Shown here: in pieces, positions 12,212 to 55,500 of the stretch | Layout: each line of letters starts with the position of its first letter | Position numbering within the stretch: position 1 is the first letter of the stretch | Assembly: GCA_963514005.1 (NCBI GenBank) | Contig: OY740804.1 | Coordinates: forward strand, 5,208,001 to 5,272,000 | Origin: Raja brachyura | Lineage: Eukaryota | Length of the DNA: 64,000 nucleotides | Direction: 5' to 3' | Notes under the pieces: generated by a model | Databases searched by the model: none | The model's input: only the letters and a program-made list of their open reading frames with translations | Told to the model about the DNA's origin: nothing | Made by a program: the position numbers and the translations under genes

Positions 12212-12308
12212 CTGGTGTGAGACCAACAGCGACAAGAACCAACAGAGCGACTGTTCCCCTGGATCTGGGCCGTTTCTGGTGGGTGAATTCTCCCTGTCCC
12301 ACTGCCAT
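12212..12308 (-). CDS. Gene A exon 1 (signal peptide). No downstream Ig exon is recognisable in the window, so the gene is truncated or continues beyond position 1.
   Basis: Intact leader ending ...VGLTP(G) with donor GTAAAT. Intron-1 homology runs to ~9280, then L1-A follows. Confidence 0.65.
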
Positions 12309-19200: not shown

Positions 19201-22200
19201 TTTGAGCAAGGATCCTTCCTGGGCCACCATAGATGAACCAAGCCCCTTGATCTAGACATGAGGCTCGCCCATTGAGATGCCAGTGCAGCGGTAGAGTTGC
19301 TGCCTCACGGCAGAGGAGTCCAGGGTTCGATCTTGACTACCGGTGCTGTCACAGCAGAGTTTGTACGTTCTCCTGTGATCGCAAGAGTTTACTCCAGGGT
19401 CTCCAGTTTCCTCGCACATTCCAAAGACGTGCGGGTTTGTAATAAATTGTCCCTCGTGTGTAAAGCAAAATTGGTGAGCGGACCCGGTGGGCCAAAGGGT
19501 CCATTTCCACGCTGTATCTTTTAACTGAGCTGAACTGAACTTAACTAATTTGTTCTTAGGTGAGACTGAGTTGGCTCTTCGAGTTACTAACCTGTTTGGA
19601 AGTATTGAACCAAGAGACTCAGTGGAACTTGCTGCCTCGGTGGTTGGTGCATTTTGAGGCAGGGTGGTCAGAGCCCTTTTGTATATTGTTGCCAAGGTGG
19701 TGGTGACCATATCTGGGCGGCTTGTTTGAGACCCTGGTGGAGATAAAGTGAATGAAGTTTTCGAACATTAAATGTCTGAAACCACGTTCTGTGCAACTTT
19801 AGTGAGGTGGGGGAGATGCCTCAGTTGGGAGCGATCTTGCTCTGTGTGGGGAGATTCCTGGGTTCAAATCCCAATCCAGAGATTTGAGCAAGGATCCTTC
19901 TGAGGCCACCATAGATGGGCCAAGCCTCTTGATCTAGACAGGAGGCTCACCCATTAAGATGCCACAGGATCGCAAGCATCCAGAGACTTCTTTCATGCCC
20001 TTCAGAGTCCCACAGGCTGTGTTATCTTCCTGCTGCTAGAGTTAGGCACATGTCTTCTACATTGGAGAAGAACCTGGGAGCGGGAGGATCCATGGACTAT
20101 TTGCGTTACGCGGAAGGAATTGGAAATAATGCAATTTGGTTGGAGGTATCCACCTGAAACATTAATTCTCGTTCTCTCTCCACAGGTTCATAAGTGATAG
20201 GGGCAGAATTAGGCCATTCGGCCCATTAAGTCTACTCCACCTTTCAATCATGGCTGATCTATCTCTCACTCTCAACCCCATTCTCCTGCCTTCTCCCCAT
20301 ATTGCTTGACTCCCGTACTAATTGAGAACCTGTCAACCCCCACCTTAAAAATACCCAATGACTTGGCCCTCATTGGAAACATGGTAAAAGCTTATCCCTG
20401 TACGTCAGTACAGACGACAACAATAAACTGAGCTCATGAATCACCAAAGTTTGTGAGACACAAGGAATCGCAGGTGCTGGAATCTTAAGCAAAGTGCTGG
20501 AGTAACTCAGCAGGTCAGGCAGCATCTGTGGAAGGAATGAATAGATGATGTGTTGGCTTGGGACCCTTCTTCAGATGTTGTGTGAGTGGTGGGTGTGACA
20601 GTGACGGGCAAGGGGAGAGGGTGAGGGGGCGGTTCCCCCCTTCCCCAGTGAGGGGGCGGCAGAGGTTAAGGTCCCGGAAAGATCGTCTTTGGGGAAATGA
20701 GCCGCCAGCAGCAGAACCGCCGGTCCCCATTGATGACCCCCCCCACCCCACCACGGACCCCCGGGGATGTGGCACCGAGTCACTGTCAGGACTGAGGCCG
20801 GGAATTCCCAGGCTGGAATTTTCACAGCTGGGAGAGTGAGGAGAGATCGTCAACGTACCGTCTGATACCTTGAATGAGAAGGAGGTCCTTTCAGCGATGT
20901 TGAATAATATGTTTATCTCACACCAGTAGAATCCTTCGTCACTCTTCTCCAGGTTGTCGATGGTTACTGAAACTATCCGTTCTGTTTTGTTATCAGTCAT
21001 CGATGTTCTCCCTACTCGTGGGTGATCAGTGGAAACCACGGTAGAAGATAACTGGTAAAAATAACCTTTCCTCCATCGCTTCCTGTTGTCAATGTATTCC
21101 CGACCATACGGACATTCCACAGTGACCGACTGCCCCAACTCTCCCCTCACCTCCTTGGGTCCAGTTATTCCCCTTGACCCTGTTGGCACATTAATGATGA
21201 AAGATCACTCACACTGCAGCACAAGCTGAGTTTTAACAAAAAACATGTCATTTGTGCTGTTCAGACAGGTTCATGGTTTTGCATAGATCATGTGTGGCAA
21301 GGAACTGTAGGTGCTAGTTTACACCAAAGAAAGACACAAAGTGCTGGAGTAACTCAGCGGGACAGGCAGCATCTCTGGAGAAAAAGGATGGGTGTCCTTT
21401 TCGGGTCGGGACCCTTCTTGATCTCCCGGTAGCCAACCCTGTCAACGTCCCTTCCCATTCCCACACTGACCTTTCTGTCCTGGGCCTCCACCATTGCCAG
21501 AGTGAGGCCACATGCAAATTGGAGCAACCACACCTCATATTACGCTTAAGTAGTTTACAACCCAACGGTTTGAACGTTGAATTCTCTAATTTTAAATATC
21601 TTCTACTCACCTGCCTCTCCCCTCCCCCCCCTTGACCCCTTTCTCCACCCTGGTGGGTGAGGGGCCGGTTTCCCCCCACCTGCCCCAGTGAGGGGGCGGC
21701 AGAGATTCTGGTCCCGGAGTGATCGTCTTTGGGGTAATGAGTGGCCAGCAGCAGAACCGCCAGTTGCTGGGACCTTCCGTGGGGCTGGTGTCTGACAGCC
21801 CCCACCCCCCCCCCCCACCCATAATGCTCCTGGGACAGTAGGCAGTTGGTGTGGCCCCACGGGCAAGGACCCCAGTAAATGAGGTATCCACACCCCCCCC
21901 CCCCCCACCCTCACCGCGATCCCCGGGAATGTGGCACCGAGTCACCGTCAGGACCGAGGCCGGAATTCCCAGGCTGGAATTTTCACATCTGGAAGAGTGA
22001 GGAGAGATCATCAACGTACCTTCAGAAACCTTCAATGAGATGGGGGGCGATTCTAAGAGTGAATCTCTTTTGCTTTCTATCATACACCAGTAGAGTCCTT
22101 CATCACTCTTCTCCAGGTTGTCGATGGTTACTGAAACTAACCGTTGTATTTTGTTATCAGTCATCGATGTTCTCCCTCGTTGTGGGTCATCAGTAGAAAC

Positions 22201-24205
22201 CACGGTAGAAGATGACCAGTAATCATCACCTTTACTCCATCGCTTCCTGTTGTCTCTGTATTCCTGACCATACTGACATTCCACAGTGACCGACTGCCCC
22301 AACTCTCCCCTCACATCCCCGGGTCCAGTTATTACCCATGACCCTGTTGGCACATTAATGATGAAAGATCACTCACACTGCAGCAACACAAGCTGAGGTT
22401 TAACAATAAAACACATGTCATTTGTGCTGTTCAGACAGGTTCATGGTTTAGCATAGATCATGTGTAGCAAGGAACTGTAGGTGCTGGTTTACACCAAAGA
22501 TAGACACAAAGAGCTGGAGTAACTCAGCGGGACAGGCAGCATCTCTGGAGAAACCAATGGGTGATGTTTCCTCACCCATTCCTTCTCTCCAGAGATGCTG
22601 CCCGTCCCGCTGAGTTACTCCAGCATTTTGTGTCTCTCTTCTTTTGCATAGATCCTGTTGCACTTTAATGCTTTTCCCGCTGGTGTTAATTCCCATTTCA
22701 CCGGGATTGTTCCCCAAGTTCCAGTGAAAGCAGAACCAAGAAGGGTCTCGACCCGAAATGTCGCCTATCTCCTTCGCTCCTTAGATGCTGCTGCACCCGC
22801 TGAGTTTCTCCAGCTTTTTGTGTAACCCTAGATTCTCCAGCATCTGCAGTTCCTTCTTTAACACTGTTTCTGAATCTACCTGGCGCCCAGATCCTCCTTC
22901 CCTGTGGGCGTGGCTTGACCTGAGTGGTGGTCATGTGACAGGAAGCCAACGTGTCACTCACTCTGACCCACCCCGTGTTCAATCTCATTACAACCCACTT
23001 CCCCATTGAACTAGTAGAAACAAGGAACTGCAGATGCTGGTTAATACACAAAAGGACACTAAATGCTGGAGTAACGCAGCGGGTCAGGCGGCATCTCTGG
23101 AGAGAAGCAATGGGTGACGTTTCGGGTCGAGACCCTTCTTCAGACCAACAGTCAGCGAGGGAGGAAGTCAAGAGATATGCAAGGGGTAAAGCATTTAGCT
23201 GATCTGCTGTCAAGTCACTGAGAAAGTTCACCTGGAGATAGTTTGCACCAGAATAGTGGAGCAAACTCTCTGGTCTGGGGGCAAGAGTTACCACTACACC
23301 CATAATCACCAAGGCCAGCTTTTCTACAGGGAGTTAGCTGTGTGCAATTTGGATGCGCACAGCTACACAACAGTTATTAGTGCAGGAAAAAACAAGTCTG
23401 CAAGCACTTTATCTTTAGCAGCTCATAGCCCAGTAGTCTGCTCTGTGGCTCAAAATAATTCAAGGTGCTAGTAAATAATTCTGAAGAACAGATCATAAGT
23501 TAATTAGTACTAGAGCAGAATTAGGCCATTTGGCCCATCAAGTCTACTCTCCATCATTCAATCATGGCTGATCTACCTTTCCCTCTCAACTAAATCCTCC
23601 TGCCTTCTCCCCAGGACTCCTGACACCAGTACTGATCAAGAATCTATCCATCTGCCTTAGAAATATCTATTGGCTTCCACAGCATTCTGTGGCAATGAAT
23701 TCCACAGTTTCACCACCCTTGACTAAAGAAATTCCTCCTCATCTCCTTCCAAAAGGAATGTCCTTTAATTCTGAGGCTGCGACCTCTGGTCCTAGACTCT
23801 CCTACTAGTGGAAACATCCTCACCCCATCCACTCTATCCAGGACGTTCACTATTCGGTAAGTTTCAGTGAGGTCCACAAGGCAAGCTGTAGGTAGTTATC
23901 TCCCTTCTCCACAGGTAGCTAGCTGTGTGCAATTTGGCTGCACACAACACGACAACAACCGCTGATGGAAGTCTCTACAGGAACTGACGAGTGTTGAGCA
24001 ATTTATCCTCAGCTCCGCACACAGTACAGAGAGTCTGTGGTTACAAATAATTCAAGGCGCTGGTAAATAATTCCAAAGAACAGAGCATTTTGTAAAACAA
24101 CGATTTACCTGATGTGAGACCAACAGCGACAAGAACCAACAGAGCGACTGTTCCCCTGGATCTGGGCCGTTTCTGGTGGGTGAATTCTCCCTGTCCCACT
24201 GCCAT
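13181..24205 (-). CDS. Gene B: 6-exon CD300/pIgR-like receptor with two tandem Ig-V exons, 364 aa if both are used. Exons 24205-24109, 22343-22020, 21179-20859, 19733-19592, 16129-16022, 13283-13181
   Basis: GT-AG introns with compatible phases. Exon lengths sum to 1095 nt with no internal stop. Every exon is homologous to gene C. Confidence 0.8.
14008..14283 (+). mobile_element. tRNA-derived SINE. Other copies: ~19280-19530 +, ~27095-27285 +, ~45680-45940 -, ~53950-54245 -, ~56985-57245 -, and partial copies ~50255-50420 - and ~60247-60410 -
   Basis: A box TGGCGCAGCGG, B-box-like GGTTTGATC/GGTTCGATC, and shared body sequence. Confidence 0.85.
14286..15923 (-). mobile_element. Tc1-family DNA transposon, defective, in gene B intron 5 (TM to tail)
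   Basis: ~220-bp IR/DR-type inverted repeats ending CAGTGCCCTCC. Transposase fragments [34 protein letters not shown]. Confidence 0.92.
16022..16129 (-). CDS. Gene B transmembrane exon
   Basis: [36 protein letters not shown] with intact AG and GT sites. Confidence 0.85.
16320..18341 (+). mobile_element. 5'-truncated Rex1/Babar-clade LINE in the gene B stalk-TM intron
   Basis: [30 protein letters not shown], (TTGA)n tail. Empty site present at ~58190-58200. Confidence 0.9.
18455..18700 (+). mobile_element. Old degenerate CR1 RT fragment
   Basis: Decayed homology to the ISKFADDTKI...WAEQWQ..FN.DKCEV region. Confidence 0.5.
19592..19733 (-). CDS. Gene B stalk exon
   Basis: 142 nt, i.e. 15 nt shorter than gene C and in frame. 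[47 protein letters not shown]. Confidence 0.83.
20859..21179 (-). CDS. Gene B Ig-V exon D2
   Basis: 321 nt, phase 1-1. [23 protein letters not shown]...[27 protein letters not shown]. Confidence 0.93.
21420..21600 (+). mobile_element. Penelope-like element remnant (GIY-YIG endonuclease C-terminus) between the two Ig exons of gene B
   Basis: Translates to LPVA...[49 protein letters not shown]. Confidence 0.75.
22020..22343 (-). CDS. Gene B Ig-V exon D1
   Basis: 324 nt, phase 1-1. [23 protein letters not shown]...[28 protein letters not shown]. Confidence 0.93.
23111..23148 (-). ncRNA. Minimal hammerhead motif in gene B intron 1, sense orientation
   Basis: Identical to the 43701-43738 motif, on the minus strand. 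Confidence 0.65.
24109..24205 (-). CDS. Gene B exon 1, signal peptide
   Basis: [32 protein letters not shown](G), 97 nt, donor GTAAAT. Confidence 0.82.
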
Positions 24206-24787
24206 GTCTCGGCTGCGTTGGATTGGTTTTGTCCCTGCACTGCGTTTGAGTTGTCCTCTTCCTCATTCACAACAGAAGTCAAACAGTCAATTTCCGTTTG
24301 CTCAGGAAACGACTTTGCAGTGGTTCGAGACCAACTTGGTGACTCACTTGCCACCTCCCCCAACCTCCTCACCACGGGCAATGCCCCTATCAGGAGTGGG
24401 CTGCAATGCTCTCCTGTTTGCTGGATTGGAGCATCTCCTCGAAGCTCTGCTTCATCCTGGTGACGTTTGCCCGCTTGACTGGCGCTCTGTCCACCACTGC
24501 AAACATTCCCTGCTGTCTTTTGGGTGAATGTCAGGATGTACAGATGTGTCTGCAAACATAGGTACAGAATTCGGCCATTTGCTCCATTGAGTCTACTCCG
24601 CCATTCAATCATGGATGATCCATCTTTCCCACTCCATCCCATTCTCCTGCCTTCTCCCCACAACTTTTGTCACCCTGAGTGAACCTGTCAATCTCCAATT
24701 TTAAAATATCCATTGACTTGGCCTCCACAGTCGTCTGTGGCAATGGATTCCACAGATTCATCACCCTCTGGCTAAAGAAATTCCTCC

Positions 24788-24890
24788 TCAAGTGGTCAAG
24801 TTAGATTGGACGTAGGTGGGGTGTGGTGATGCTGTAGGGTCAAGGTGATGAGATTTGTGCATCTCCAACTGGTGAACACCCTCTCTGGCC
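24788..24890 (-). pseudogene. Orphan cytoplasmic tail exon of a truncated upstream unit
   Basis: Homologous to the other tail exons, with a Tyr>His change (EMHKS). Intron-4 homology ends at ~27285 at L1-B, and no TM or Ig exon is present. Confidence 0.7.
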
Positions 24891-25680
24891 CTGAGAAGCT
24901 AAATGATGATTATTGGGCGTCATTCCATTAGAATAACAATATAAATATAACGATTACCCTTAATTTTATCTTATTCTTCTAACGAGTGTCCACAGTTCAA
25001 TACTTGTAATCATTTAACCGTTTTTATATCCCCATTGCTCAATGGTTCAATGGTACTTTATTGTCTCATGCACATGGGTACAGTGAAATTTCTTTTGCAT
25101 AGAATTCAGTAAAAATCTTACTTTATATAAGCACAGCTGAAGCTAAGAACAAAACTATCAATAGCAGATTTTAAGAAGCAGTACACAAGAGTTGCCACAT
25201 TTCTGGCGGTATTTTATATTCTTAAGCATCAAATTGGTAAAAAAGTAGTCTTATTTTGGGCTTAAAGGCCCGTTGTCGTAGAGACGGCACTGGGTGGGAG
25301 TTGCAGGGGTCGGCCTGGCCTGGCGATGATGTCGGTGCCTCCACCATCGCCGCTTTGTGCTGCTGCAGGCCGTGTCTGGTCCGCGCGCTCGTCCCCGACC
25401 TCTGTGGGACCTCCAGCGGCACCGATCCACCGGCTGCTGCAGGGCCTCCAGCAGCCCACTTGCACTCCGCCCACACCTTGACCCACCAACGCACCCTTTT
25501 CCCCTCACCTCACACGGCCGTCTCCATGCGAGGTGAGGCCCCACCCAGCCAGCTCACCGGCGCTGTTCCTCTCCTCCCTCCACCACTGCCGACCCATCTC
25601 CAAGGTCTCGGCTGTTTTTTTCCTTGAATAACAATTAAAACGCAGTTTATAATCTCTACCATTAAATTTTACCTGAGGAT

Positions 25681-27087
25681 TTCCCGGGGCAGAAAACGCT
25701 AGTGGGAGTTGTGTACAGGCCACCAAACAGCTGTCGTGGAGTTGGGGGTGGCATCAAACAGGAAATTAGAAATGCGTGCAACAAAGGTAAAACAGTTATA
25801 ATAGGTGACTTCAATCTACATATAGATTGGGTGAATCAAATTGGCAGGGGTGCTGAGGAAGAGGATTTCTTGGAGTGTATGCAGGATAGTTTTCTAAACC
25901 AACATTTAGAGGAACCAACGAGAGAGCTGGCTATTCTAGACTGGGTATTGAGTAATGAGGAAGGGTTAGTTAGCAGTCTTGTTGTGCGTGGCCCCTTGGG
26001 CAAGAGTGACCATTATATGGTTGAGTTCTTCATTAGGATGGAGAGTGACATAATTGATTCAGAAACAAGGGTTCTGAACTTAAAGAAAGGTAACTTTGAG
26101 GGTATGAGATGTGAATTTGCCAAGATAGACTGGCAATTGATTCTTAAAGGGTTGATGATGGATATGCAATAGAAGGCATTTAAAGACTGCATGGATGAAC
26201 TACAAAAATTGTTCATCCCAGTTTGGCAAAAGAATAAATCAGGGAAGGTAGTACATCCGTGGATAACAAGGAAAATCAGGAATAGTATAAAAACAAAAGA
26301 TGATGCATACAAATTAGCCAGAAAAAGCAGCCTACCAGAGGACTTGGAGAAATTCAGATTCCAGCAGAGGAGGACAAAGAGATTAGGGTACACCAGTCAT
26401 TGAAAGTAGGCATGCAGGTGCAACAGGCAGTGAAGAAAGTGAATGGTATGTTAGCATTCATAGCAAAAGCATTTGAGTATAGGAGCAGGGAGGTTCTACT
26501 GCAGTTGTACAGAGTCTTGGTGAGACCACACCTGGAGTATTGCATACAGTTTTGGTCTCCTAATCTGAGGGAAGACATTCTTGCCATAGAGGGGTACAGA
26601 GAAGGTTCACCAGACTGATGCCTGGGATGTCAGGACTTTCATATGAAGAAAGACTGGATAGACTCGGCATGTACTCGCTAGAATTTAGAAGATTGAGGGG
26701 GGATCTTATGGAAACTTACAAAATTCTTAAGGGGTTGGACAGGCTAGATGCAGGAAGATTGTTCCTGATGTTGGGGATGTTCAGAACAAGGGGTCACAGC
26801 TTAAGGATAAGGGGGAAGTCTTGTAGGACCGAGATGAGAAAAACATTTTTCACACAGTGAGTGGTGAATCTCTGGAATTCTCTGCCACAGAAGGTAGTTG
26901 AGGCCAGTTCATTGGCTATATTTAAGAGGGAGATAGATGTGGCCCTTGTGGCTAAGGGGATCAGTGGGTATGGAGAGAAGGCAGGTAAGGGATACTGAGT
27001 TGGATGATCAGCCATGATCATATTGAATGGCGGTGCAGGCTCGAAGGGCCGAATGGCCTACTCCTGCACCTATTTTCTATGTTTCTA
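25681..27087 (+). mobile_element. CR1 LINE, 5'-truncated and internally deleted (junction ~26385)
   Basis: EN part GVVYRPPNS, IGDFN, GKSDH. RT C-terminus LVRPHLEY, RRLRGDL, RTRGHS. ctatgtttcta tail. Empty site present at ~13995. Confidence 0.9.
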
Positions 27088-27284
27088 AATGACCCAGGGT
27101 GACACAGTGGCGCAGCGGTAGAGTCGCTGCCTTACAGCGTCAGAGACCCGGGTTTGATCATGACTACGGGTGCTGTCTGTACGGAGTTTGTATGTTCTGC
27201 TTGTGACAGCGTGGGTTTTATCCGCACAAACTTTCTTACCATAAACCAAAGACGTGTAGTTTTGTAGGTTAATTGGCCTCTGTA

Positions 27285-30958: not shown

Positions 30959-31124
30959 GACTTCCGGTGGCGCTATGGAGGGTTAGAGTCCAGTGCCAGC
31001 TAGCTCAATCTAAAAATCGAGAAAAACCGGGATAAAATGGACCTATCTGCTGCTCTGCACCGGCTGCCTGCAACACTGCTTGTAACGAGTGAGTGAGTGA
31101 CATCATCAGGCCTGCGACTCCAGT

Positions 31125-35200: not shown

Positions 35201-35363
35201 AAGCGAAATCATGACTTCCGGTTGGCGTCATGCTGTGAGTGGAGCCGCGCCATTACAGCTCCGCAAAAAACTGAATTTAAAACGGGGGTAAAAGGGTCAA
35301 ACAAACAAACTCACCACAGGAGATTGATTGCACACGGCTCCGGCAGCGTTTGAAAAAGAAGAA

Positions 35364-40843: not shown

Positions 40844-43700
40844 CTGTTCTTGGCAACATGGCTCGACGTGCCCCCCGCGGGATCTGATGAGAATAATGTA
40901 TTTTTAAAATGGAAGTAACATGTCTTTACTGATACCATCATTTGTAGTAGAGTTATTAATAATACATATTGTGATCTTTTATTTATATATATAATATAGG
41001 CAGAGGTTAAAACATTTTATTATTATTTTTTTTTATTTTTTTTATTTTTTTTTAGTTCTTTTCTCTTCTTTTCTTTTTTACAATTATCAAATTATTAGTT
41101 AACTATACCCTCATTGATTTATAAGCTACTTTTTCTTTATCTTTATTTCTAAAAAAATAATAGATAAGTATTATTAATGTTTTACATGTATGATAAAATG
41201 AATTATCTGATATCTGTAAACTTGTTTAAGGTATCGTAATTGATTATCTTTAATAAAAAAATATTACAAAAAAAAGCGAAATCATGCCAATAATGGAAAG
41301 AAACCCACATATTTTACAACAATTCCCCTTTAAAATAGTAAAAGAAAAACTTAAATATCTTGGAATTTATGTAACAAAGAGATATACTTCTTTATTTAAA
41401 TCTAATTTTCCCCCTTTACTGAATAAATTAGATAAGAATATTTTGTATTGGAAAACCATACCCATTTCAATGATGGGTAGAATTAATGCGATAAAAATGA
41501 TTTTTCTCCCGCAACTATTATACCTTTTTCAATTAATCCCGATATATCTCCCAAAAACTTTTTTTTAAAAAGGTTGATTCTATAGTCACCAATTTTATAT
41601 GGGATTATAAGAACCACAGAATAAACAAGAAACATTTATGCAAATCAAAAGTAAATGGAGGCTTAGCATTACCGAATTTTATGTTTTATTTCTGGGCAGT
41701 TAATATTAAGAATATGAACTTTTGGTTGGAAGAATTGGATAAACAACCAGACTGGTTAAAAATGGAAAAAGAAGATTGTTTACCTTTTGAAATTGGGTCA
41801 ATTCTATTTGCTATTACCAAATTAAGCAAAAAAAACTATAAAGAAAACCCTATAATAGACAGTGGAATACGCACCTGGGAACAAATAAAGAAAACATTAA
41901 AATTGGATTATATACCACTATCTCTTCCTATTGTAAACAATGCAGCATTTAAACCCTCATGCATGGATAAGGGTTTTGTGCAATGGAAAAACCATGGAAT
42001 TACAAAGATGGGTGATCTCTAAAGGAAAAATACATTTCTCTCATTTCAGGAATTACAACAAATTTATGGGCTTCAATCAAAGGATTACTTTAGATATTTA
42101 CAAATCAGAGACTATGTTGAGTCAATTACAAATGAATATAAATTTAGAAAGATAGAAATTTTTGATGAATGTTTGAATAAACACCCGAACACAGAAAAAT
42201 TGATACCATATATTTATAGTATTTTATTAGATAGCGATGTTCCAAAGACGGATTTATATAGGCAATCATGGGAAAATGAATTAGGTCAAACAATTAAACC
42301 AGATATTTGGGATGAAAGCTTACATCGTATACATCACTGTTCGTTAAATACTAGACATTCTTTAATACAATTTAAAGTATTACATAGATTGCATTATTCA
42401 AAACAAAACTGAATAGAATTTTTCCAAGTGTTTCCCCTATTTGTGATAAATTAGATAAGAATATTTAGAGGCTAACCTAATACACTCATTCGTAAATTGT
42501 ATAAAAATTAATAATTTTTGGATGGAAATGTTTAAGATAATCTCAGAAGTCGTCAATACGAAACTGGTTCCTGACTCAAAATTAATAATATTAGGAATAA
42601 CAGAACCAAATCAATTCATTACTTCGAATCAAAGAACTTTTATTGATTATAGTTTAATAATTGGGAAAAAATTAATATTAAAATTTTGGAAAGGCTCTAT
42701 AACCCCCACAATTAAAATGTGGATCACAGAAATGTCGGAGACCCGATATTTGGAAAGAATAAGATTTGTCTTAATGGACAAACAAGAAATATTTAAAATA
42801 ATATGGTCCCCATTTATTGATTATTTGAAGGGGCAAACTGGTTCAGCACGAGAACCCGACTGAAACCAGAATCAAAGAATATATGAAGTAGTACATTTCA
42901 TAAAACGCGGATATATCTCCAACAATGTAAAATCTGTAGAATATTCCATTCTTTCCGAACTTTATATATATATATATTTTTTTTTTTTGTTTAACCTTTC
43001 TTCACTATTTTCTATCTTTATAAAAAATGGAAAAAAATAATATAGAAGCACAATTACTACGCAATCATTAATATAAATAATACTGATTATGTATATCTAC
43101 AAAGAACAAAATGATTTTTATTATGTCAACAATGACCACGTACCTTCTTATTATGTAATTGCTTCTAATTAATAAAAAAAATTAACAAAAAAGAGATGGA
43201 TAGATTCTTGATCAGTACTGGTGTCTGGAGTCCTGGGGAGAAGAGGATTTAGTTGAGAGGGAAAGGTAGATCAGCCATGATTGAATGATGGAGAGTAGAC
43301 TTGATGGGCCAAATGGCCTAATTCTGCTCCGAGTACTAATGAACTTATGATCTGTTCTTCAGAATTATTTACTAGCACCTTGAATTATTTTGAGCCACAG
43401 AGCTACTGGGCTATGAGCTGCTAAAGATAAAGTGCTTGCAGACTTGTTCTTTCCTGCACTAATGACTGTTGTGTAGCTGTGCGCAGCCAAATTGCACACA
43501 GCTAACTCCCTGTAGAAAATGACCCGACAGCTGGCCTTGTTGATTATGGGTGTAGGGGTAACTCTTGCCCCCAGAACAGAGAGTTTCATCCACTATTCTG
43601 GTGCAAACTATCTCCAGGTGAACTTTCTCAGTGACTTAACAGCAGATCAGCTAAATGCTTTATCCCTTGCATATCTCTTGACTTCCTCCCTCCCTGACTG

Positions 43701-43738
43701 TTGGTCTGAAGAAGGGTCTCGACCCGAAACGTCACCCA
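43701..43738 (+). ncRNA. Minimal type-I hammerhead ribozyme motif, Penelope-derived
   Basis: GGU-CUGAAGA-A-GGGUC(UC)GACCC-GAAA-CGUC-ACC: catalytic core, helix II, palindromic ACGU helix III, GGU/ACC helix I. Confidence 0.65.
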
Positions 43739-46700
43739 TTGCTTCTCTCCAGAGATGCCGCCTGACCCGCTGCGTTACTACAGCATTTAGTGTCTATCAA
43801 AGACACACGGCACTCCCTCAACGCACTGCAATGGGAAATGTTGAACCTAAACCTTAGCACATTCAAAGAAAAAACCTTTGAAAGTCAGCTATTGGGTACA
43901 GGCGGGCATCTCAAATGAGGAAGCACCAGAGTGACTGTCCAATTTAGCATTTGGAGAAGTTGTGGTAATCTCCCCCTTCTGAGAAAAACCAGCTGCCTTA
44001 CAACAGACTCTGCTGCTCGAGCTGTTCTCCACACCGTGCTTTCCCCAGCCTCTGAGTTCTCCTTCAAGGCATTTGTCTTGTGGCTTGTGAGCGGACCTGG
44101 ACTGAACTGATGATGTGTCTCCACCCCTGCTCCTGAATCTGCAGAGTTTCACATGTGTTAGAGTCATAGAGTTATACAGTGTGGAAACAGGCCCTTCGGC
44201 CCAACTTGCCCACACCGGCCAACATGTCTCAGCAACACTAGTCCCACCTGTCCACGTTTGGTCCATGTCCCTTGAAACCTATCCTATCCATGTACCTGTC
44301 TAACTGTTTCTTAAATGATGGGATAGTCCCTGCCTCAACTACCTCCTCTGGCAGCTTCATCCATACACCCACCACCATTTGTGTGAAAAAGACAACTCAT
44401 GATTATTCCAGGTGGATGTGGAGTTTGAAACATCAGTGGCAGATCCAGCTTCCACCAAAGGCCGGGAAGTTTAGTTCAATGGGGCACAAAGTGCTGGCGT
44501 AACTCAGTAGGTCAGGCAATATCTCGTGGTCTTGACTTGAAACGTCACCTATCCATGTTCTCCACAGATGCTGCCTGACCTGCTGAGTCACCACTGGCAC
44601 CACACGCAGCTGGCTATTCAGCTTTAATAAAGCACAAAGTGCTGGAGTAAGGCAGCAGGACAGGCAGCATCTCTGGGGAACATGGATAGGTGACATTTTG
44701 GGATGAGACCTGAATAAGGGGTAGGCCAGATGAGGAAAAACCTTTTCAACCCGTGTTGTGAATCTGTGGAATTCTCTGCCACAGAGAGCAGTGGAGGCCA
44801 ATTTACTGGATGTATTCAAGAGAGAGTTAGATATAGCCCTTAGGTCTAATGGAATCATGGGATATGGGGAGCAAGCAGAATGGGGCACTGATTTTGGATG
44901 ATCAGCCATGATCATATTGAAGGGCAGTTCTGGCTCGAAGGGCCGAATCGCCTACTCCTGCCCCAATTTTCTATGTATACATGTTTTTATGAATCGTCAG
45001 CTGTCCACTTTCTCCAGAGATAGTTCCTGTCCCGTTGAGTTACTCCAGCTCTTTGTGTCTATCTTTGGTGTAAACCAGCACCTGCAGTTCCTTGCCACAA
45101 ATGATCTATGCAAAACCATGCACCTGTCTGAACAGCACAAATGACATGTTTTTTATTGTTAAACCTCAGCTTGTGTTGCTGCAGTGTGAGTGATCTTTCA
45201 TCATTAATGCACCCACAGGGTCAAGGGGAATAACTGGGCCCAAGGAGATGAGGGGAGAGTTGGGGCAGTCGGTCACTGTGGAATGTTCGTATGGTCGGGA
45301 ATACGTCATCAACGGGGACCGGCGGTCCTGCTCGCTGACGGCTCATTTCCTCAACGATGATCGCTCCGGGACTAGAACCTCTGGTGCCCCCTCAATGGGG
45401 GAGGGGGGGAAACTTTCACGCTCAAAAACGTAATTCACTTTATCTCCAAAAGGTTCTCAAACAAGCCACCCGGATATGGTCATCACCAACTCTACAACAA
45501 TAAGCACAAGGGCTTCCACCACAACCACTCTGACCACCCTGCCTCAAGATGCACCAACCACCGAGGCAACAAGTTCTACTGAGTCTCTTGGTTCAACACT
45601 TCTAATCAGGTTAGTAACTCGAAGAGCCAACTCAGCCTCACCTGCGAACAAATTAGTTAAGTTCAATTCAGCTCAGTTAAAAGATACAGCGTGGAAATGG
45701 ACCCTTTGGCCCGCCGAGTCAACTCTGAGTAGCGATCACCCCATGCACCAGTTCTGTTCTACACACTAGGGACAATTTACTACAAACCCGCACGTCTTTG
45801 GAATGTGGGAGGAAACTGGAGAACCCAGAGTAAACTTTTGCGATCATAGGGAGAACGTACAAACTCTGCTCTGACAGCACCGGTAGTCAGGATCGAACCT
45901 GGATCTCCTGCGCTGTGAGGCAGCAACTCTACCGCTGCGCTGACATTTCAATGGGCGAGCCTCATGTCTAGATCAAGGAGCTTGGTCCATCTATGGTGGC
46001 CTAGGAAGGATCCTTGCTCAAATCTCTGGATTGGGATTCGAACCAAGAACCTCTCCACACAGAGCAAGAGCGCTCCCAACTGATTCATCTCCCACACACA
46101 GGGCCGGATAAGCTAGACAAGCTTAAGCTTAGGGCCTCAAGATCTAGGGGGGCCTACTCACCTTGCTGCCTCACCAGACCCGTTAAACCTCGCCGCCCCA
46201 CCAACCATCCGCCCACCGGGACATCCTACTCTTTGCCAGCTGACACTGGCCACTCCACCGCCCTCCAGCAGCCCGCAGCCATCGCCGTCGCCTTACCTGC
46301 AGCCTGGACAGCACCGAGCCTGAAGCTTCCACGCTGCAGACTCCCACTCCCCCCGGGTTTGACAGCACTGGCTCCTAGTGCTAGTCAGGTAACCCTGGTA
46401 ATCCCAGTGGCTATTCCACTGGGTATTCCCCATTCCCCTCAAACCATGTGACCCCAGCTCTTCCCCACCCAAAGTAATTGAAGTAATTTAATTAAATAGA
46501 TCCTGGAAAACCGATAACCATTGGTGAAAAACCAGTCCAGGCATTACATTTTGGGTTTCAGCCCCATCCTACCCTTTGGGCTTCTACCCCAACCTAACTG
46601 TGTGTTAGTTGTCAGTGCGTGATGTGTGTGTAGGAGGGAGAGAAGGGAGGGAGGGAGGGAGGGAGGGAGGGAGAGAAGGGAGGAAGGACAGAAGGGAGGG

Positions 46701-47069
46701 AGGAAGTAGAGAAAGAAGGGATGGAGCGAATGAGGGAAGGGAAAAGAGAAGAGGGAGGGAGGGAGGGAAGAAGGCTGGCAGATGCAATATGATGAAAAAA
46801 AATTCCCAGCGTTGATCTGCGATAACTCTGTGTGAAAGTAATAATATTTCCTTGGATTTCCAGGGACATCGTGCTGAATGTTCGCCGTGTTTGGGGTGTG
46901 TTACGCTGGGTACTCTTTGGAGTTCTGCTTCTCTTCCCGGTTTCCATCAGCTGTGTGACAACTTTTAAAAAGTAAAAGTTTGCAATCTCTTCACTCTGGT
47001 GTTCACATTAAATTCAATTGGGAATGATGGGAATTTACTTTAGAATTGTAGAGATAAAGTGTGGACATA

Positions 47070-50000: not shown

Positions 50001-50254
50001 ATGACTACTTTCATTTACATGTCTTTGCTGTGACCCAAACATTATGGTGCCCTGAAATGGGGGGACAATGTATAAACACTGCTGTAATTTCTATATGGTG
50101 AAACCAAAATATATAAAAATGCCCTTTATTAAAATCTGACAATTTGCACTTTAACCACATGTGATGTTTTTCTATTACAATTCTCAAATTGTAGAGAACA
50201 GAGGCAAATAAAATAAATTATAGGTCTTTTTCCCAAACATTATGTAGGGCACTG
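47070..50254 (+). mobile_element. Tc1 transposon, paralogous copy, interrupted by a CR1
   Basis: TA-CAGTGCCC...GGGCACTG-TA with degenerate transposase. Confidence 0.92.
47912..49406 (-). mobile_element. Young 5'-truncated CR1 LINE nested in the Tc1
   Basis: Uninterrupted 468-aa RT ORF (NYRPVSLTS, DFSKAFD, GVPQGSVLGP, YADD) and (ATGGTTAT)n tail. Absent from the other two Tc1 copies. Confidence 0.95.
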
Positions 50255-52457
50255 TAGGCCCTACAGCCGACCAAGTCCATGACGACCAATGATCACCCTG
50301 TACACTCGCACTATCATACACACGAGGGACAATTTACAATTATACAGAGGCCAATTAACCTACAAAACTACACGTCTTTGGATTGTGGTAAGAAACCGGA
50401 GCATCCGGCGAAAACCAGGTGGTAGAGATTACAAACTGCATTTTAATTGTCATTCAAGGAAAAAAACAGTCGAGACCTTGGAGATGGGGTCGGTAGTGGT
50501 GGAGGGAGGAGAGGAACAGCGCCCGTGAGCTGGCTGGGTGGGGCCTCACCTCGCATGGAGACGGCCGTGGGAGGCGAGGGGAAAAGGGTGCGTTGGTGGG
50601 TCGAGGTGTGTGCGGAGTGTGAGTGGGCTGCTGGAGGCCCTGCAGCAGCCGGTGGGTCAGGTGCCGCTGGAGGTCCCACAGCGGTCGGGGACAAGTGCGC
50701 GGATTGGACACGGCCTGCAGCGGCACGGAGCGGCGGTGGAGGCACCGACAACATCGCCAGGCCAGGCCGAACCCTGCAACTCCCACCCAGTGCCGTCTCC
50801 ACGACAACGGGCCTTTAAGCCCAAAATAAGACTCTACTTTTTTACCAATTTGATATTTTAAAGAATATAGATACCACCAGAAATGTGGCAACTCTTGTGT
50901 ACTGTATTATATAATCTGCTATTAATACTCTTGTTCTTAGCTTCAGCTGTGCTTATATAAAGTAAGATTTTGACTGAATTCTATGCAAAAGAAATTTCAC
51001 TGTACCCATGTGCATGAGACAATAAAGTACCATTGAACCATTGAGCAATGGGGATATAAAATGGTTACATGATTACAAGTATTGAACTGTGGACACACGT
51101 TAGAAGAATAAGATAAAAATTAAGGGTAATCATTTTATATCAATATTGTTATTCTGATGGAATGTCGCCCAATAATAATCGTTTCGCTTTTCAGGGCCAG
51201 AGAGGGTGTTCACCAGTTGGAGATGTACAAATCTCATCACCTTGACCCTACAGCATCACCACACCCCACCTATGTCCAATCTAACTTCACCACTTGAGGA
51301 GGAATTTGTTTAGGCAAAGGGTGATGAATCTGTGGAATTCATTGCCACAGATGGCTGTGGAGGCCAAGTCAATGGATATTTTTAAATTGACAGGTGTCAA
51401 AGAGATTGACAGGTGTCAAAGATTGAGGGGAGAAGGCATGAGAATGGGATGGAGGGGGAAAGATAGATCATCCATGATTGAATGGCGAAGTAGACTTGAT
51501 GGAGCAAATGGCCGAATTCTATACCTATGTTTGTAGACACATCTGTACATCCTGACATTCACCCAAAAGACAGCAGTACATAGACTTTAACTCAAAGCTG
51601 GCTCTCCAGAATGTGAACTTTTAACTTTATTACCAAATGAATTGCTGTGTAAAACACTACACATTGAATAATGATTAAAATAATCCAATGTAATAAAAGA
51701 TGGCAGAATTTTTGTCATAAAGTCATAAGTGATAAGAGTAGAATTAGGCCATCAAGTGTACTCCGCCATTCAATCATGGCTGACCTATCTCTTACTCCCA
51801 ACCCCATTCTCCTGCCTTCTCTCCATAACCTCTGACCCATGTACTAATTAGTAGTTAAGAATCTATCTGGTGTTTATCAGGTGATGTGTGGACTTACCTG
51901 ATCACGTTTGGCGTTGTCTTATTTCTCCTGGGTAACGTTTCAACACATGAGAAGCCGAGGAAGGCTGATCAATTGTGACGTGCATTTTGAGGTGGGTAAA
52001 CAGATCACAAGTTCACAGTTTCCAGGAGTAGAATTTGGCCATTCGGCCCATTGAATGGTCATTCAAACATGGCTGATCTCTGCCTCCTAACCCCATACAA
52101 GTTCAGACACAGTGTGCCCGCATTTAGGGGATTGGGTTGAGGGGGTGGGCAAGGGAATGTTTGCGGTGGTGGACAGAGCGCCAGTCAAGCGGGCAAACGT
52201 CAGCAGGATGAAGCAGAGCTTCGAGGAGATGCTCCAATCCAGGCAACAGGAGAGCATTGCAGCGCACTCCTGATAGGGACATTGTCCGTGGTGAGGAGGC
52301 TGGGGGAGATGGCAAGTCAGTCACCAAGTTAGTCTCGAACCACTGCAAAGTCGTTTCCTGAGTAAACGGAAATTGACTGTTTGACTTCTGTTGTGAATGA
52401 GGAAGAGGACAACTCAAACGCAGTGCAGGGACCAAACCGATCCAACGCAGCCGAGAC

Positions 52458-52554
52458 ATGGCGGTGGCACAGGGAGAATTCACCCACCAGAAACGGCCCA
52501 GATCCAGGGGAACAGTCGCTCTGTTGGTTCTTGTCGCTGTTGGTCTCACATCAG
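52458..52554 (+). CDS. Gene C exon 1, signal peptide [32 protein letters not shown](G)
   Basis: Kozak-like gacATGG, basic n-region, hydrophobic h-region, and phase-1 donor G|GTAAAT that joins the Ig exon as ...LTSGSWG-ITGP. Confidence 0.82.
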
Positions 52555-55500
52555 GTAAATCGTTGTTTTACAAAATGCTCTGTTCTTTAGAATTATTTAC
52601 CAGCGACTTGAATTATTTGTAACCACAGACCTCTCTGTACTGTGTGGGGAGCTGATGATAAATTGCTCAACACTCGTTAGTTCCTGTAGAGACTTCCATC
52701 AGCGGTTGTTGTCGTGTTGTGTGCAGCCAAATTGCACACAGCTAGCTCCCTGGGGAGAAGGGAGATAACTACCTACAGCTTGCCTTGTGGACCTCACTGA
52801 AACATACCAAATAGTGAACGTCCTGGATAGAGTGGATGGGGTGAGGATGTTTCCACTAGTGGGAGAGTCTAGGACCAGAGGTCGCAGCATCAGAATTAAA
52901 GGACATTCCTTTAGGAAGGCGATGAGGAGGAATTTACTTATTCAATGGTGGTGAAACTGTGGAATTCATTGCCACATAATGCTGTGGAGGCTGTCAATAT
53001 ATATTTCCAAGGCAGAGGTAGATAGATTTGTGATTAGTACAAGTGTTAGGAGTCATGGGGAGAAGGCAGGAGGATTGAGTTGAGAGGGAAAGGTAGATCA
53101 GCCATGATTGAATGGTGGAGAGTAGACTTGATGGGCCAAATGGCCTAATTCTGCTCCTAGTACTAATGAACTTATGATCTGTTCTTCAGAATTATTTACT
53201 AGCACCTTGAATTATTTTGAGCCACAGAGCAGACCACTGTGCTACGAGGTGCTAAAGATAAAGTGCTTGCAGACTTGTTTTTTCCTGCACTAATGACTGT
53301 TGTGTAGCTGTGCGCATTCAAATTGCACACAGCTAACTCCCTGTAGAAAATGACCCGAGAGCTGGCCTTGTTGATTATGGGTGTAGGGGTAACTCTTGCC
53401 CCCAGACCAGAGAGTTTGCTCCACTATTCTGGTGCAAACTATCTCCAGGTGAACTTTCTCAGTGACTTGACAGCAGATCAGCTAAATTCGTCTTGTGGCT
53501 TGTGAGCGGACCTGGACTGATCTGATCATGTGTCTCCACCCCAGCTCCCGAATCTGCAGAGTTTCACATGTGTTAGAGTCATAGAGTGATACAGTGTGGA
53601 AACAAGCCCTTCGGCCCAACTTGCCCGCACCGGCCAAAACGTCTCAGCAACACTTGTCCCACCTGTCCACGTTTGGTCCAAGTCCCTTCAAACATGTCCT
53701 ATCCATGTACCTGTCTAACTGATTCGTAAATGATGGGATAGTCCCTGCCTCAACTACCTCCTCTAGAGCTGGTGTTATTCAGTAGGTCAGGCAGTATCTC
53801 ATGGTCTTGACTTGAAACGTCAATGTTCTCCACAGATGCTGCCTGACCTACTCATTCACCACAGGCAACTGGCTATTCAGCTTTAGTAAAACACAAAGTG
53901 CTGGAGTAACACTGCAGGTCAAGCTGCATCTCTTGGTGACTTTCCTTTAGTGACTTTAGAGATACAGCACGGAAACAGGCCCTTTGGCCCATCAAGTCCA
54001 CGCCGTCCAGTGATCACCTGACACACTAACACTACCCTACACACGAGGAGCAAATTACAATTTTAACTGAAGCCAATTAACCTACAAACCTGCACGTCTT
54101 TGGAGTGTGGGAGGAAACTGGAGCACCCGGAGAAAGCCCGCGCTGTCACGGGGAGAACGTACAAACTCCATACAGACAGCACCCGAGGTCAGGGTCAAAC
54201 ATGGGTCTCTGGCGCTGTTAGGCAGCAACTCTACCCCTGTGCCTCCATGTCTCTACCCGTAACGTTACCTATCCAAGTTCTCCAGCGATGTTGCCTGACC
54301 CGCTGAGCCATCACAGGCAGCTGGCTAAGCAGCTTTAGTAAAGCACAAAGTGCTGGAGTAAATCAGCAGGACAGGCAGCATCTCTGGAGAACATGGATAG
54401 GTGACGTTTAGGGTTGGGACCTGAATAAGCGGTAGGCCATTTAGGACTCAGATGAGGAACAACCTTTTCACCCAGAGAGTTCCACTTTCTCCAGAGATAG
54501 TTCCTGACCCGTTGAGTTACTCCAGCACTTTGTGTCCTTTTGTGTATTAACCAGCATCTGCAGTTCCTTCTTTCTACTAGTTCAATGGGGAAGTGGGTTG
54601 TAGTGAGATTGAACACTGGGTGGGTCAGAGTGAGAGACACGTTGGCTTCCTGTCACATGACCACCACTCAGGTCAAGCCACACCCACAGGGAAGGAGGAT
54701 CTGGGCGCCAGGTAGATTCAGGAGCAGTTCTGCTTTCACTGGAACTTGGGGAACAATCCCGGTGAAATGGGAATTAACACCAGCGGGAAAAGCATTAAAG
54801 TGCAACAGGATCTATGCAAAAGAAGAGAGACACAAAATGCTGGAGTAACTCAGCGGGACGGGCAGCATCTCTGGAGAGAAGGAATGGGTGAGGAAACATC
54901 ACCCGTCGGTTTCTCCAGAGATGCTGCCTGTCCCGCTGAGTTACTCCAGCTCTTTGTGTCTATCTTTGGTGTAAACCAGCACCTGCAGTTCCTTGCTACA
55001 CATGCCCTATGTGAAACCATGAACCTGTCTCAACAGCACAAAGGACATGTTTTTTATTGTTAAACCTCAGCTTGTGTTGCTGCAGTGTGAGTGATCTTTC
55101 ATCATTAATGTGCCCACAGGGTCATGGGGAATAACTGGACCCGGGGAGGTGAGGGGAGAGTTGGGGCAGTCAGTCACTGTGGAATGTCAGTATGGTCGGG
55201 AATACAGAGACAACAGGAAGCGATGGAGGAAAGGTGATTATTACCTGCCATCTTCTACCGTGGTTTCTACTGATGACCCACAACGAGGGAGAACATCGAT
55301 GACTGATAGCAAAACACAACAGATAGTTTCAGTAACCATCGACAACCTGGAGAAGAGTGATGAAGGACTCTACTGGTGCGAGATAGACATATCATTCAAC
55401 ATCGATGAATCGACCTCCATCTCATTGAAGGTTTCTGAAGGTACGTTGACGATCTCTCCTCACTCTCCCAGATGTGAAAATTCCAGCCTGGGAATTCCCG

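What the first reader, a model, noticed from the sequence alone, without database searches (positions are those of the whole stretch)
20859..55440. Diversity concentrated in the Ig C-C' and F-G loops while leader, TM and tail are almost invariant
Seen: the three intact Ig domains share framework ([35 protein letters not shown]). They differ sharply at C-C' (GDDYWS / GYFYQL / GDYYLP) and at the F-G, CDR3-equivalent loop ([14 protein letters not shown] / [13 protein letters not shown] / EIDISFNIDESTS, with a 1-aa indel). Leaders differ at about 2 of 32 residues and TM exons at about 2 of 36. Inference: diversifying selection on a ligand-binding face, giving a germline-encoded receptor repertoire on a fixed signalling module.
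Basis: partly seen in the sequence, partly recalled or inferred. Interest (0 to 1): 0.82.

Follow-up and report, generated by a model that had tools for sequence, protein, structure and literature searches.

The report
Skate CD300-like receptors with variable loops
A skate gene cluster encodes activating immune receptors of the known CD300/pIgR-like family; the two loops that form the ligand pocket in mouse CD300lf, and the stalk, have diverged faster than the neighbouring introns, while the leader, membrane anchor and tail have barely changed.

Summary
All nine quoted motifs lie where stated, in three intact phase-1 V-set Ig exons (20859-21179-, 22020-22343-, 55120-55440+).

The exons belong to a recently duplicated, head-to-head array of activating CD300/pIgR-like (MDIR-type, "CMRF35-like") receptor genes of a skate. 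The nearest gene models are from Amblyraja radiata and Leucoraja erinacea.

- **Faster than the flanks:** Ig exons have 17.4% variable sites against 8.3% in flanking introns.
- **Slower than the flanks:** leader 3.0% against 8.4%, TM 3.7% against 6.8%, tail 8.6% against 19%.
- **C-C' loop:** with loops defined from an AlphaFold model, non-synonymous change runs at 4-7.5 times a neutral proxy in all three pairs.
- **Ligand site:** in CD300lf, the best structural match (TM 0.91), the C-C' and F-G loops wall the ligand cleft.

The interpretation needs correcting in three ways:
- Two of the three domains are D1 and D2 of one gene.
- The sharpest contrast, the F-G loop of Ig B, is one block replacement with an indel and raised dS, and it resembles a loop class shared with Leucoraja.
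- Ig C is a fine mosaic.

Framework dN/dS is about 1, and three of five units are wrecks. Formal positive selection is therefore unproven. This is a new member of a known kind. A first-reader note reports the same pattern on neighbouring DNA of this genome.

The parts
24106..24205 (-). Leader exon of gene B (ATG to G|GTAAAT donor, 33 codons + 1 nt)
   Evidence: tblastn with P0002, 89% identity; boundaries read
22020..22343 (-). Ig exon B, the membrane-distal domain (D1) of gene B. V-set, 324 nt, phase 1/1. C-C' loop at 22210-22230; F-G segment at 22042-22083.
20859..21179 (-). Ig exon A, the second domain (D2) of gene B. V-set, 321 nt. C-C' loop at 21046-21066; F-G segment at 20881-20919.
   Evidence: clade with A. 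radiata P0157 D2, support 99/96
19592..19733 (-). Ser/Thr/Pro-rich stalk exon of gene B; lacks the 5-aa STTTT segment of the other copies
16022..16129 (-). Transmembrane exon of gene B (…[15 protein letters not shown]…, Arg inside the hydrophobic span)
13871..13940 (-). Short cytoplasmic tail exon of gene B, ending in TGA
52458..52557 (+). Leader exon of gene C
55120..55440 (+). It is a fine mosaic of B-like and A-like tracts.
56758..56914 (+). Stalk exon of gene C
58394..58501 (+). Transmembrane exon of gene C
60451..60520 (+). Tail exon of gene C
45215..45304 (+). Truncated Ig exon of pseudogene D: only the first ~90 nt, with no leader found upstream. Its stalk (45453-45609), TM (46864-46971) and tail (50459-50528) are still present.
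12209..12308 (-). Orphan leader exon (g12); no Ig exon downstream of it
25554..25622 (-). Tail-exon remnant with a 1-nt deletion that shifts the frame (gUp)
62460..62559 (+). Leader exon of a further gene (E) that runs off the window

Best explanation
The window holds part of a young, birth-and-death array of activating CD300/pIgR-like (MDIR-type, annotated elsewhere as 'CMRF35-like molecule') receptor genes of a skate. Two arrays lie head to head around a block of L1 elements.

Each gene is built as leader, one or two V-set Ig exons, mucin-like stalk, an Arg-bearing transmembrane exon and a 23-residue tail. Duplicated units are only about 3-9% diverged in their introns.

Against that background, the extracellular exons have changed faster than the introns. 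The change is concentrated in the C-C' and F-G loops and in the stalk. The leader, TM and tail have changed more slowly than the introns.

The loop divergence comes from two processes:
1. Nearly all-non-synonymous point changes, seen in C-C' in all three lineages and in F-G between A and C.
2. Short-tract replacement of loop segments between Ig exon types, seen in the F-G block of B and in the mosaic exon C.

By homology with CD300lf, the two loops wall the ligand-binding cleft. The most likely reading is therefore adaptive divergence of ligand specificity among activating receptors that share one adaptor-coupling module and have inhibitory counterparts with related ectodomains.

Shown here: anatomy, family, fold, and rates relative to introns. 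Inferred: ligand binding at that cleft, signalling through an acidic-TM adaptor, and selection as the cause.
For: **Exon map and splice sites.**

**Family.**
- Pfam V-set, E = 3e-14.
- The best PDB sequence matches are pIgR D5 and CD300/CLM-1.
- The AlphaFold model has pLDDT 95.6. Its best Foldseek matches are CD300lf chains, TM 0.91 and rmsd 1.9 Å.
- The nearest proteins are skate 'pIgR-like' and 'CMRF35-like molecule 3' models. A. radiata P0176 has an almost identical TM and tail.

**Variable sites, exon against flanks.**
- Ig: 56/321 against 25/303, p = 0.0008.
- Stalk: 31/142 against 50/377, p = 0.02.
- Leader: 3/100 against 59/699.
- TM: 4/108 against 31/456.
- Tail: 6/70 against 84/436.

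**Loop rates.**
- NG86 dN/dS is 2.5-5.5 in the loops and 0.74-1.3 elsewhere.
- With DSSP-defined loops, C-C' pN is 0.21-0.35 against a neutral proxy of 0.03-0.07 in all three pairs (p = 0.0003-0.025).

**Independent check.** In 16 Ig domains from three other skate species, C-C' and F-G have the highest entropy: 1.17 and 1.43 bits against 0.43 for strands. MWU gives p = 8e-5 against the rest and p = 0.001 against the other loops.

**Block exchange.** There is a run of 11 consecutive B-specific sites in F-G (permutation p = 0.001). The F-G dS of B is 0.3-0.4 against 0.04-0.08 elsewhere.

**Transcription.** A contig of a related transcript joins leader to Ig exon at the predicted splice sites (X18 record 13).
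Against: - Only three intact Ig exons with DNA were available. Classical dN > dS is marginal (p = 0.04-0.10).
- Framework dN/dS is about 1, and three of five units in the window are wrecks, so constraint in the cluster is weak.
- Conversion from diverged paralogues outside the window could raise loop divergence above intron divergence without any selection. No donor could be looked for outside the window.
- Loops are the least constrained parts of any Ig domain.
- No RNA evidence exists for these exact genes. The spliced contig is about 92% identical and comes from a run of another organism label.
- The cleft-floor disulfide of CD300lf is absent here, so the pocket may not be conserved.
Confidence: 0.55

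Rival explanations
1. Sequence exchange alone. The loop differences are old loop 'cassettes' moved between Ig exons by short-tract gene conversion, while the same process homogenises introns and frameworks. No positive selection on point mutations is needed.
For: - The F-G segment of B is a single block: 11 consecutive B-specific sites, a 3-nt indel and dS of 0.3-0.4.
- Its motif DSLLES matches L. erinacea P0155 D2 (DSLIES) and the class of A. radiata P0157 D1. Overall, though, B groups with C and not with that clade.
- Exon C switches between B-like and A-like tracts several times.
- All Rhinoraja domains cluster by species (99/96), as expected under concerted evolution.
Against: - The C-C' loop shows interleaved changes private to each of A, B and C: about 8 changes in 21 nt, with sd of 0-0.5. 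That is the pattern of independent point substitutions, not of one tract.
- A and C, which share an F-G class, differ there by 5 changes, all non-synonymous.
- No donor for the B tract exists in the window.
- Keeping distinct cassettes in the face of homogenisation itself implies selection.
Confidence: 0.2
2. Relaxed constraint. The cluster is decaying by birth and death, genes B and C are drifting or dead, and loops simply tolerate change best.
For: - Non-loop dN/dS is 0.74-1.3.
- Three of five units are remnants: the orphan leader, the truncated Ig D and the frameshifted tail.
- Genes B and C are not among the gene models returned by two protein searches.
- No exact-match RNA was seen.
Against: - Neutral drift cannot push loop divergence 4-7 times above the intron and synonymous rate.
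- All six exons of gene B and all five of gene C keep open frames and consensus splice sites.
- Leader, TM and tail vary less than their flanks.
- The same loops are the variable ones in annotated genes of three other skates.
Confidence: 0.12
3. Domain-position specialisation. The contrast mainly reflects fixed functional differences between the first and second Ig domains of a multi-domain receptor, as in pIgR D1 against D2-D5. It is not a repertoire of alternative specificities.
For: - B and A are tandem exons of one gene, with matching phases and one leader upstream.
- A forms a 99/96 clade with D2 of the inhibitory A. radiata P0157.
- Relatives carry 2-5 such domains.
Against: - Gene C is a single-domain gene whose loops differ from both A and B.
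- A. radiata single-domain activating models P0175 and P0176 carry yet other C-C' loops on the same TM module.
- B does not fall in the trans-species D1 clade.
- A related transcript joins the leader directly to an A-like exon, so domain position is not fixed.
Confidence: 0.13

Closest known systems
Mouse CD300lf / CLM-1 and the CD300 (CMRF35-like) family
   Same: - Single V-set domain of the same fold: Foldseek TM 0.91, rmsd 1.9 Å, 32-33% identity.
- Phase-1 Ig exon, mucin-like stalk, and activating members with a charged TM and short tail.
- In CD300lf the ligand cleft lies between the CC' and CDR3 (F-G) loops (PMC6166816). Those are the two loops that vary here.
   Different: - The family's extra Cys pair (Cys36-Cys44 in CD300lf, the floor of the cleft) is replaced by R/S and S in all three domains, and in the 19 Rajidae domains aligned. 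P0176, not in that alignment, keeps only the first Cys.
- One to several tandem domains per gene, rather than one.
- The ligands are unknown.
Polymeric Ig receptor (pIgR) domains
   Same: Best sequence matches among solved structures: pIgR D5, E = 1e-27 for the whole chain. Tandem V-set domains of the same subtype. NCBI names the skate relatives 'pIgR-like'.
   Different: No five-domain architecture, no long pIgR tail with transcytosis signals, an Arg in the TM, and no C-C' disulfide. Nothing here shows binding of polymeric Ig.
MDIRs (modular domain immune-type receptors) of the clearnose skate. Cannon et al. 2006, Immunogenetics 58:362, as cited in PMC3031540.
   Same: A skate multigene family of activating and inhibitory receptors, built from variable numbers of CD300/TREM/pIgR-like Ig domains (PMC3031540). 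The window fits that description.
   Different: The published MDIR sequences could not be compared here, because the paper and its sequences are not held. Which MDIR type these genes correspond to is unknown.
Paired activating/inhibitory receptor families with fast-evolving ectodomains (KIR, LILR/PIR, teleost NITR, zebrafish PIGRL/DICP); named from general knowledge
   Same: Tandem clusters with birth-and-death turnover, similar ectodomains on either a charged-TM/short-tail or an ITIM-tail module, and variation focused on ligand-contact loops. Inhibitory relatives with VIYTTV and VVYSTI/VVYATI motifs are P0154 and P0155.
   Different: A different Ig subtype (CD300/pIgR-like V-set) and a different lineage (cartilaginous fish). 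No ligand or adaptor has been shown.

Membership tests
CD300/pIgR-type V-set Ig domain | V-set Ig fold with the canonical B-F disulfide and the D-x-G-x-Y-x-C motif | tested here: met
   - Pfam V-set, E = 5e-12 to 3e-14.
- C22 and C86 are invariant and 'SDEG(L/F)YWC' is present.
- Model pLDDT 95.6 with strands A'BCC'…DEFG.
CD300/pIgR-type V-set Ig domain | Closest solved relatives are CD300 and pIgR domains, by sequence and by fold | tested here: met
   phmmer: pIgR 1e-27, CLM-1 7e-13. Foldseek: CD300lf TM 0.91, then human CD300f (IREM-1), teleost pIgR, CD300a and pIgR D1.
CD300/pIgR-type V-set Ig domain | Second, family-typical disulfide between strands C and C' (W-C … C; Cys36-Cys44 in CD300lf) | tested here: not met
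   Positions 36 and 44 are R/S and S in Ig A, B and C, and in all 19 Rajidae domains aligned. The family consensus KYWCKGxxxxxC is seen in alignment A1. Shark relative P0063 keeps both Cys.
MDIR family of skates | Clustered multigene family in a skate, with variable numbers of CD300/pIgR/TREM-like domains and both activating and inhibitory forms | tested here: met
   - At least five units in 64 kb, carrying one or two Ig exons.
- Relatives carry 1-5 domains.
- Arg-TM forms are here and in P0175 and P0176. ITIM-tail forms are P0154 and P0155.
- Family description: PMC3031540.
MDIR family of skates | Sequence identity with a published MDIR1-5 type | not testable with these tools
   The paper (PMC3701310) and its sequences are not held. 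No MDIR-named protein was returned by the searches.
Activating member of a paired receptor family | Basic residue inside the TM span, and a short tail without ITIM or ITAM | tested here: met
   The TM reads [17 protein letters not shown](V/L)SI(S/C)CVTTF, flanked by RR and KRKK. The tail reads [22 protein letters not shown] with no tyrosine.
Activating member of a paired receptor family | Physical association with an acidic-TM adaptor (DAP12/FcRγ type) | not testable with these tools
   Needs co-expression and co-immunoprecipitation.
Genes under diversifying selection at ligand-contact sites | Site-model evidence (omega > 1) on recombination-free partitions of many paralogues or alleles | tested here: inconclusive
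   - Only three sequences with DNA were available.
- NG86 loop dN/dS is 2.5-5.5, with p = 0.04-0.10.
- Loop dN exceeds the neutral proxy at p = 0.0003-0.025 for C-C'.
- Recombination is evident.

The most novel reading that the evidence does not exclude
Skates run a germline 'loop-cassette' system on the CD300 fold. Loss of the cleft-floor C-C' disulfide freed the C-C' and F-G loops. Short-tract exchange between tandem Ig exons then shuffles pre-existing F-G and C-C' variants onto one activating signalling module, giving a combinatorial innate receptor repertoire in a cartilaginous fish. That would be comparable in logic to teleost NITRs or amphioxus VCBPs.
Probability: 0.15. Interest if true: 0.65.

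Novelty: new member of a known kind. Interest (0 to 1): 0.4.

Why it matters
Cartilaginous fishes are the oldest lineage with antibody-based immunity, and their innate Ig-type receptor families are poorly charted. This window gives a clean, testable case. Several ectodomains sit on one activating module, and their differences fall on the two loops that form the ligand cleft in mammalian CD300lf. It also shows that part of the diversity comes from block exchange between Ig exons. That matters for anyone who would run codon models on this cluster. The kind of system, paired and fast-evolving CD300/pIgR-like receptors (MDIRs), is already known, so the gain is detail, not a new principle.

Tried and rejected
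1. **Leader candidate.** An ATG-led '[16 protein letters not shown]' ORF about 170 nt upstream of each Ig exon looked like a leader. It is part of a very high-copy repeat. The true leaders lie 1.8-2.7 kb upstream.
2. **Ig C as a simple hybrid.** I considered a single unequal crossover between D1 and D2. I rejected it because B-like and A-like tracts alternate several times, and the runs test for overall clustering is not significant (p = 0.11).
3. **B as a member of the D1 lineage.** I considered that Ig B belongs to the trans-species 'D1' domain lineage. The tree puts B with C (80/70), outside the 96/84 D1 clade. Only its F-G loop resembles that class.
5. **Reads.** Read laying was swamped by intronic repeats. 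It gave no per-site paralogue profile of the Ig exons and no RNA of these exact genes.
6. **FG donor.** A search for a donor of the B F-G tract in the window found none.
7. **Literature and earlier notes.** The MDIR paper and a review are not held.
8. **Surface clustering.** Model coordinates are not exposed, so clustering could not be computed. It rests on homology with CD300lf.


Full report
**1. Observation**

The window has no N runs.

Reading the DNA gives three complete Ig exons:
- A: 20859-21179 (-), 321 nt.
- B: 22020-22343 (-), 324 nt.
- C: 55120-55440 (+), 321 nt.

Each has a CAG|GG acceptor and a G|GTACGT donor, and each is in phase 1 at both ends. The frameworks are nearly identical.

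**2. Anatomy**

I mapped the exons with tblastn, using the best full-length relative: L. erinacea 'pIgR-like' P0002, which has three Ig domains, a stalk, an Arg-bearing TM and a short tail. Together with inspection of splice sites, this gives the following units.

| Unit | Strand | Leader | Ig | Stalk | TM | Tail | State |
|---|---|---|---|---|---|---|---|
| gene B | - | 24106-24205 | B 22020-22343, A 20859-21179 | 19592-19733 | 16022-16129 | 13871-13940 | intact |
| gene C | + | 52458-52557 | C 55120-55440 | 56758-56914 | 58394-58501 | 60451-60520 | intact |
| gene D | + | none found | cut after ~90 nt (45215-45304) | 45453-45609 | 46864-46971 | 50459-50528 | pseudogene |
| g12 | - | 12209-12308 | none | - | - | - | orphan leader |
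| gUp | - | - | - | - | - | 25554-25622, 1-nt deletion | remnant |
| gene E | + | 62460-62559 | - | - | - | - | runs off the window |

So B and A are D1 and D2 of one gene, and C is the single domain of another. Units are about 10 kb long and 84-98% identical in DNA (most blocks 90-96%). The two arrays face away from each other across an AT-rich repeat block.

I neither built nor searched a joined spliced protein.

**3. What the domains are**

- **Pfam:** V-set, E down to 3e-14.
- **Solved structures by sequence:** pIgR (D5 is the best stretch) and CD300/CLM-1.
- **Model:** an AlphaFold model of Ig C built on a 30-row alignment has mean pLDDT 95.6. DSSP puts C-C' at residues 38-44 (GDYYLPS) and F-G at 90-95.
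- **Fold search:** Foldseek's best hits are mouse CD300lf chains, TM 0.91 and rmsd 1.9 Å.
- **Closest proteins:** in a scan of 1.8 billion representatives, the closest proteins are batoid and shark 'pIgR-like' and 'CMRF35-like molecule' models.
- **A. radiata relatives:** P0157 has an identical leader. The A. radiata single-Ig model P0176 has a nearly identical TM and tail.

The window therefore comes from a skate close to Amblyraja. Genes B and C themselves were not among the models returned.

The literature describes this family in skates as MDIRs. They are multigene activating and inhibitory receptors built from CD300/TREM/pIgR-like domains (PMC3031540, citing Cannon et al. 2006).

**4. Is the diversity really concentrated, and beyond chance?**

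The table gives variable sites among the copies, for each exon and its aligned flanks.

| Exon | Variable sites in exon | Variable sites in flanks | p |
|---|---|---|---|
| Ig | 56/321 (17.4%) | 25/303 (8.3%) | 0.0008 |
| Stalk | 31/142 (21.8%) | 50/377 (13.3%) | 0.02 |
| Leader | 3/100 (3.0%) | 59/699 (8.4%) | 0.07 |
| TM | 4/108 (3.7%) | 31/456 (6.8%) | not significant |
| Tail | 6/70 (8.6%) | 84/436 (19%) | 0.03 |

The contrast is real, with two caveats:
- The stalk is as variable as the Ig exon. Its pN is 0.13-0.19 against pS of 0.07-0.09, and it has a 5-aa indel.
- The 'invariance' of leader, TM and tail is only 2-3 times below what such young duplicates would show neutrally.

Inside the Ig exon, Nei-Gojobori dN/dS is 2.5-5.5 in the loops and 0.74-1.3 elsewhere. 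With three sequences, however, dN > dS reaches only p = 0.04-0.10.

I then used loops defined independently by DSSP, with flanking introns plus framework synonymous sites as the neutral proxy:
- C-C' non-synonymous divergence is 0.21-0.35 against 0.03-0.07 in all three pairs (p = 0.0003, 0.002 and 0.025).
- F-G is 2.1 times neutral between A and C (not significant).
- F-G is 14-26 times neutral for B against either A or C.

**5. How the differences arose**

A site-by-site comparison of the three exons with their flanks shows that C follows B in the upstream intron (25 sites against 2) and through most of the 5' exon. It follows A through the F-G tract (55380-55416), B again through the G strand, and A downstream.

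The F-G tract of B has these features:
- It is a run of 11 consecutive B-specific sites (permutation p = 0.001).
- It carries the 3-nt indel.
- Its dS is 0.3-0.4, against 0.04-0.08 in the rest of the exon.
- Its peptide, [10 protein letters not shown], resembles a loop class found in L. erinacea (GNDSLIESTS) and in A. radiata P0157 D1 (GKHSPIESTP).
- Even so, the domain as a whole groups with C rather than with that clade.

This is the signature of one short-tract replacement, not of many selected point changes. No donor lies in the window.

The C-C' loop is different. It carries interleaved changes private to A, B and C, and almost all of them are non-synonymous. A and C differ in F-G by five changes, all non-synonymous. 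Both processes therefore contribute.

**6. Independent data**

Sixteen Ig domains from gene models of L. erinacea, A. radiata and Rhinoraja longicauda show the same profile:
- Mean entropy is 1.17 bits in C-C' and 1.43 in F-G, against 0.43 in strands.
- MWU gives p = 8e-5 against the rest and p = 0.001 against the other loops.
- The single most variable column is residue 42, in C-C'.

The tree gives three results:
- Ig A pairs with D2 of the inhibitory-type A. radiata P0157 (99/96).
- A trans-species class-I clade exists (96/84).
- All Rhinoraja domains cluster by species (99/96).

Some domain lineages are thus older than the Amblyraja-Leucoraja split, and concerted evolution or recent exon duplication acts as well.

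A first-reader note on neighbouring DNA of this genome (s1-880736) reports the same kind of pattern. I did not check it.

**7. Function, by homology**

In CD300lf the phosphocholine head group and the norovirus P domain both bind a cleft between the CDR3 (F-G) and CC' loops. The floor of that cleft is the Cys36-Cys44 disulfide, and exchanging either loop abolishes binding (PMC6166816).

The skate domains keep the spacing of that segment but have R/S at position 36 and S at position 44. The pocket must differ, though, because its floor disulfide is gone.

I could not compute surface clustering, because model coordinates are not exposed.

The TM exon has an Arg inside the hydrophobic span, and the tail has no tyrosine. 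The motif (L/F)RW(V/L)LF recurs in a catshark relative, P0064. Coupling to an acidic-TM adaptor is inferred and not shown.

Inhibitory relatives with ITIM-like VIYTTV and VVYSTI/VVYATI tails exist: P0154 and P0155.

**8. Expression**

No listed run holding the stretch is on record as RNA.
- Contigs of run X1 match the exons exactly and also cover intron sequence, so I take X1 to be DNA of the same organism (its kind is not on record).
- One contig of run X18 (378 nt, about 92% identical) joins an A-like Ig exon at 21178 directly to the leader at 24108. That is within 2 nt of the predicted splice sites.
- One contig of run X20 covers the stalk exon exactly.

These contigs show that relatives are spliced as predicted, and that a leader-to-D2-like form exists. 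They do not show that genes B and C are expressed.

**9. Verdict**

- Ectodomain loops, and the stalk, evolve faster than neutral on a conserved activating module.
- The loops are those of the CD300lf ligand cleft.
- The three domains are not equivalent, and the sharpest contrast is a block exchange.
- Framework constraint is weak in a cluster full of wrecks, and formal positive selection remains untested.

This is a further member of a known kind of system (CD300/pIgR-like MDIR-type paired receptors). It is of moderate interest.

Noticed in passing
19592-19733 (-), 45453-45609 (+), 56758-56914 (+): The Ser/Thr/Pro-rich stalk exons vary more than their flanking introns (21.8% against 13.3% variable sites; pN is about twice pS). 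They differ by a 5-aa STTTT indel.
   Followed up: partly
12209-12308 (-); 25554-25622 (-); 45215-45304 (+): Three gene wrecks lie beside the two intact genes: an orphan leader, a tail exon with a 1-nt deletion, and an Ig exon cut after about 90 nt with no leader upstream. The cluster is turning over by birth and death.
   Followed up: partly
about 21343, 22513 (-) and 54935 (+); also 18835, 20496, 22609, 54839, 55914: A very high-copy repeat with core GCTGAGTTACTCCAGC lies 160-190 nt upstream of every Ig exon. It reaches summed contig depths in the millions in all four runs laid. It contains an ATG-led ORF that can be mistaken for a leader.
   Followed up: partly
20737-20744, 21624-21631, 21805-21816, 21893-21906 (C runs on +); 55548-55557, 55652-55664, 55763-55784 (G runs): Runs of 8-22 G on the coding strand follow each Ig exon within 100-350 nt. 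Homology between the copies breaks down there. They may be slippage or recombination hot spots.
   Followed up: no
The 10123-11752 segment is an inverted copy of 43192-44835.
   Followed up: no
protein P0153 (Rhinoraja longicauda): This gene model carries both an uncharged TM with a basic anchor and, further on, the activating NVRRVWAVLRWILFG TM. It is probably a read-through model of two neighbouring genes. If so, inhibitory and activating genes are adjacent in that species.
   Followed up: no
Ig A 20859-21179 (-), residues 62-64: An N-glycosylation sequon (NKT) in the D-E region is present only in Ig A. B has NKI and C has SKT.
   Followed up: no
46969-46973 (+): The last exon base before the TM-exon donor of pseudogene D is A rather than G (AAAAA|GTAAAA against AAAAG|GTAAAA). 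This changes the split codon from Arg to Lys and weakens the donor.
   Followed up: no
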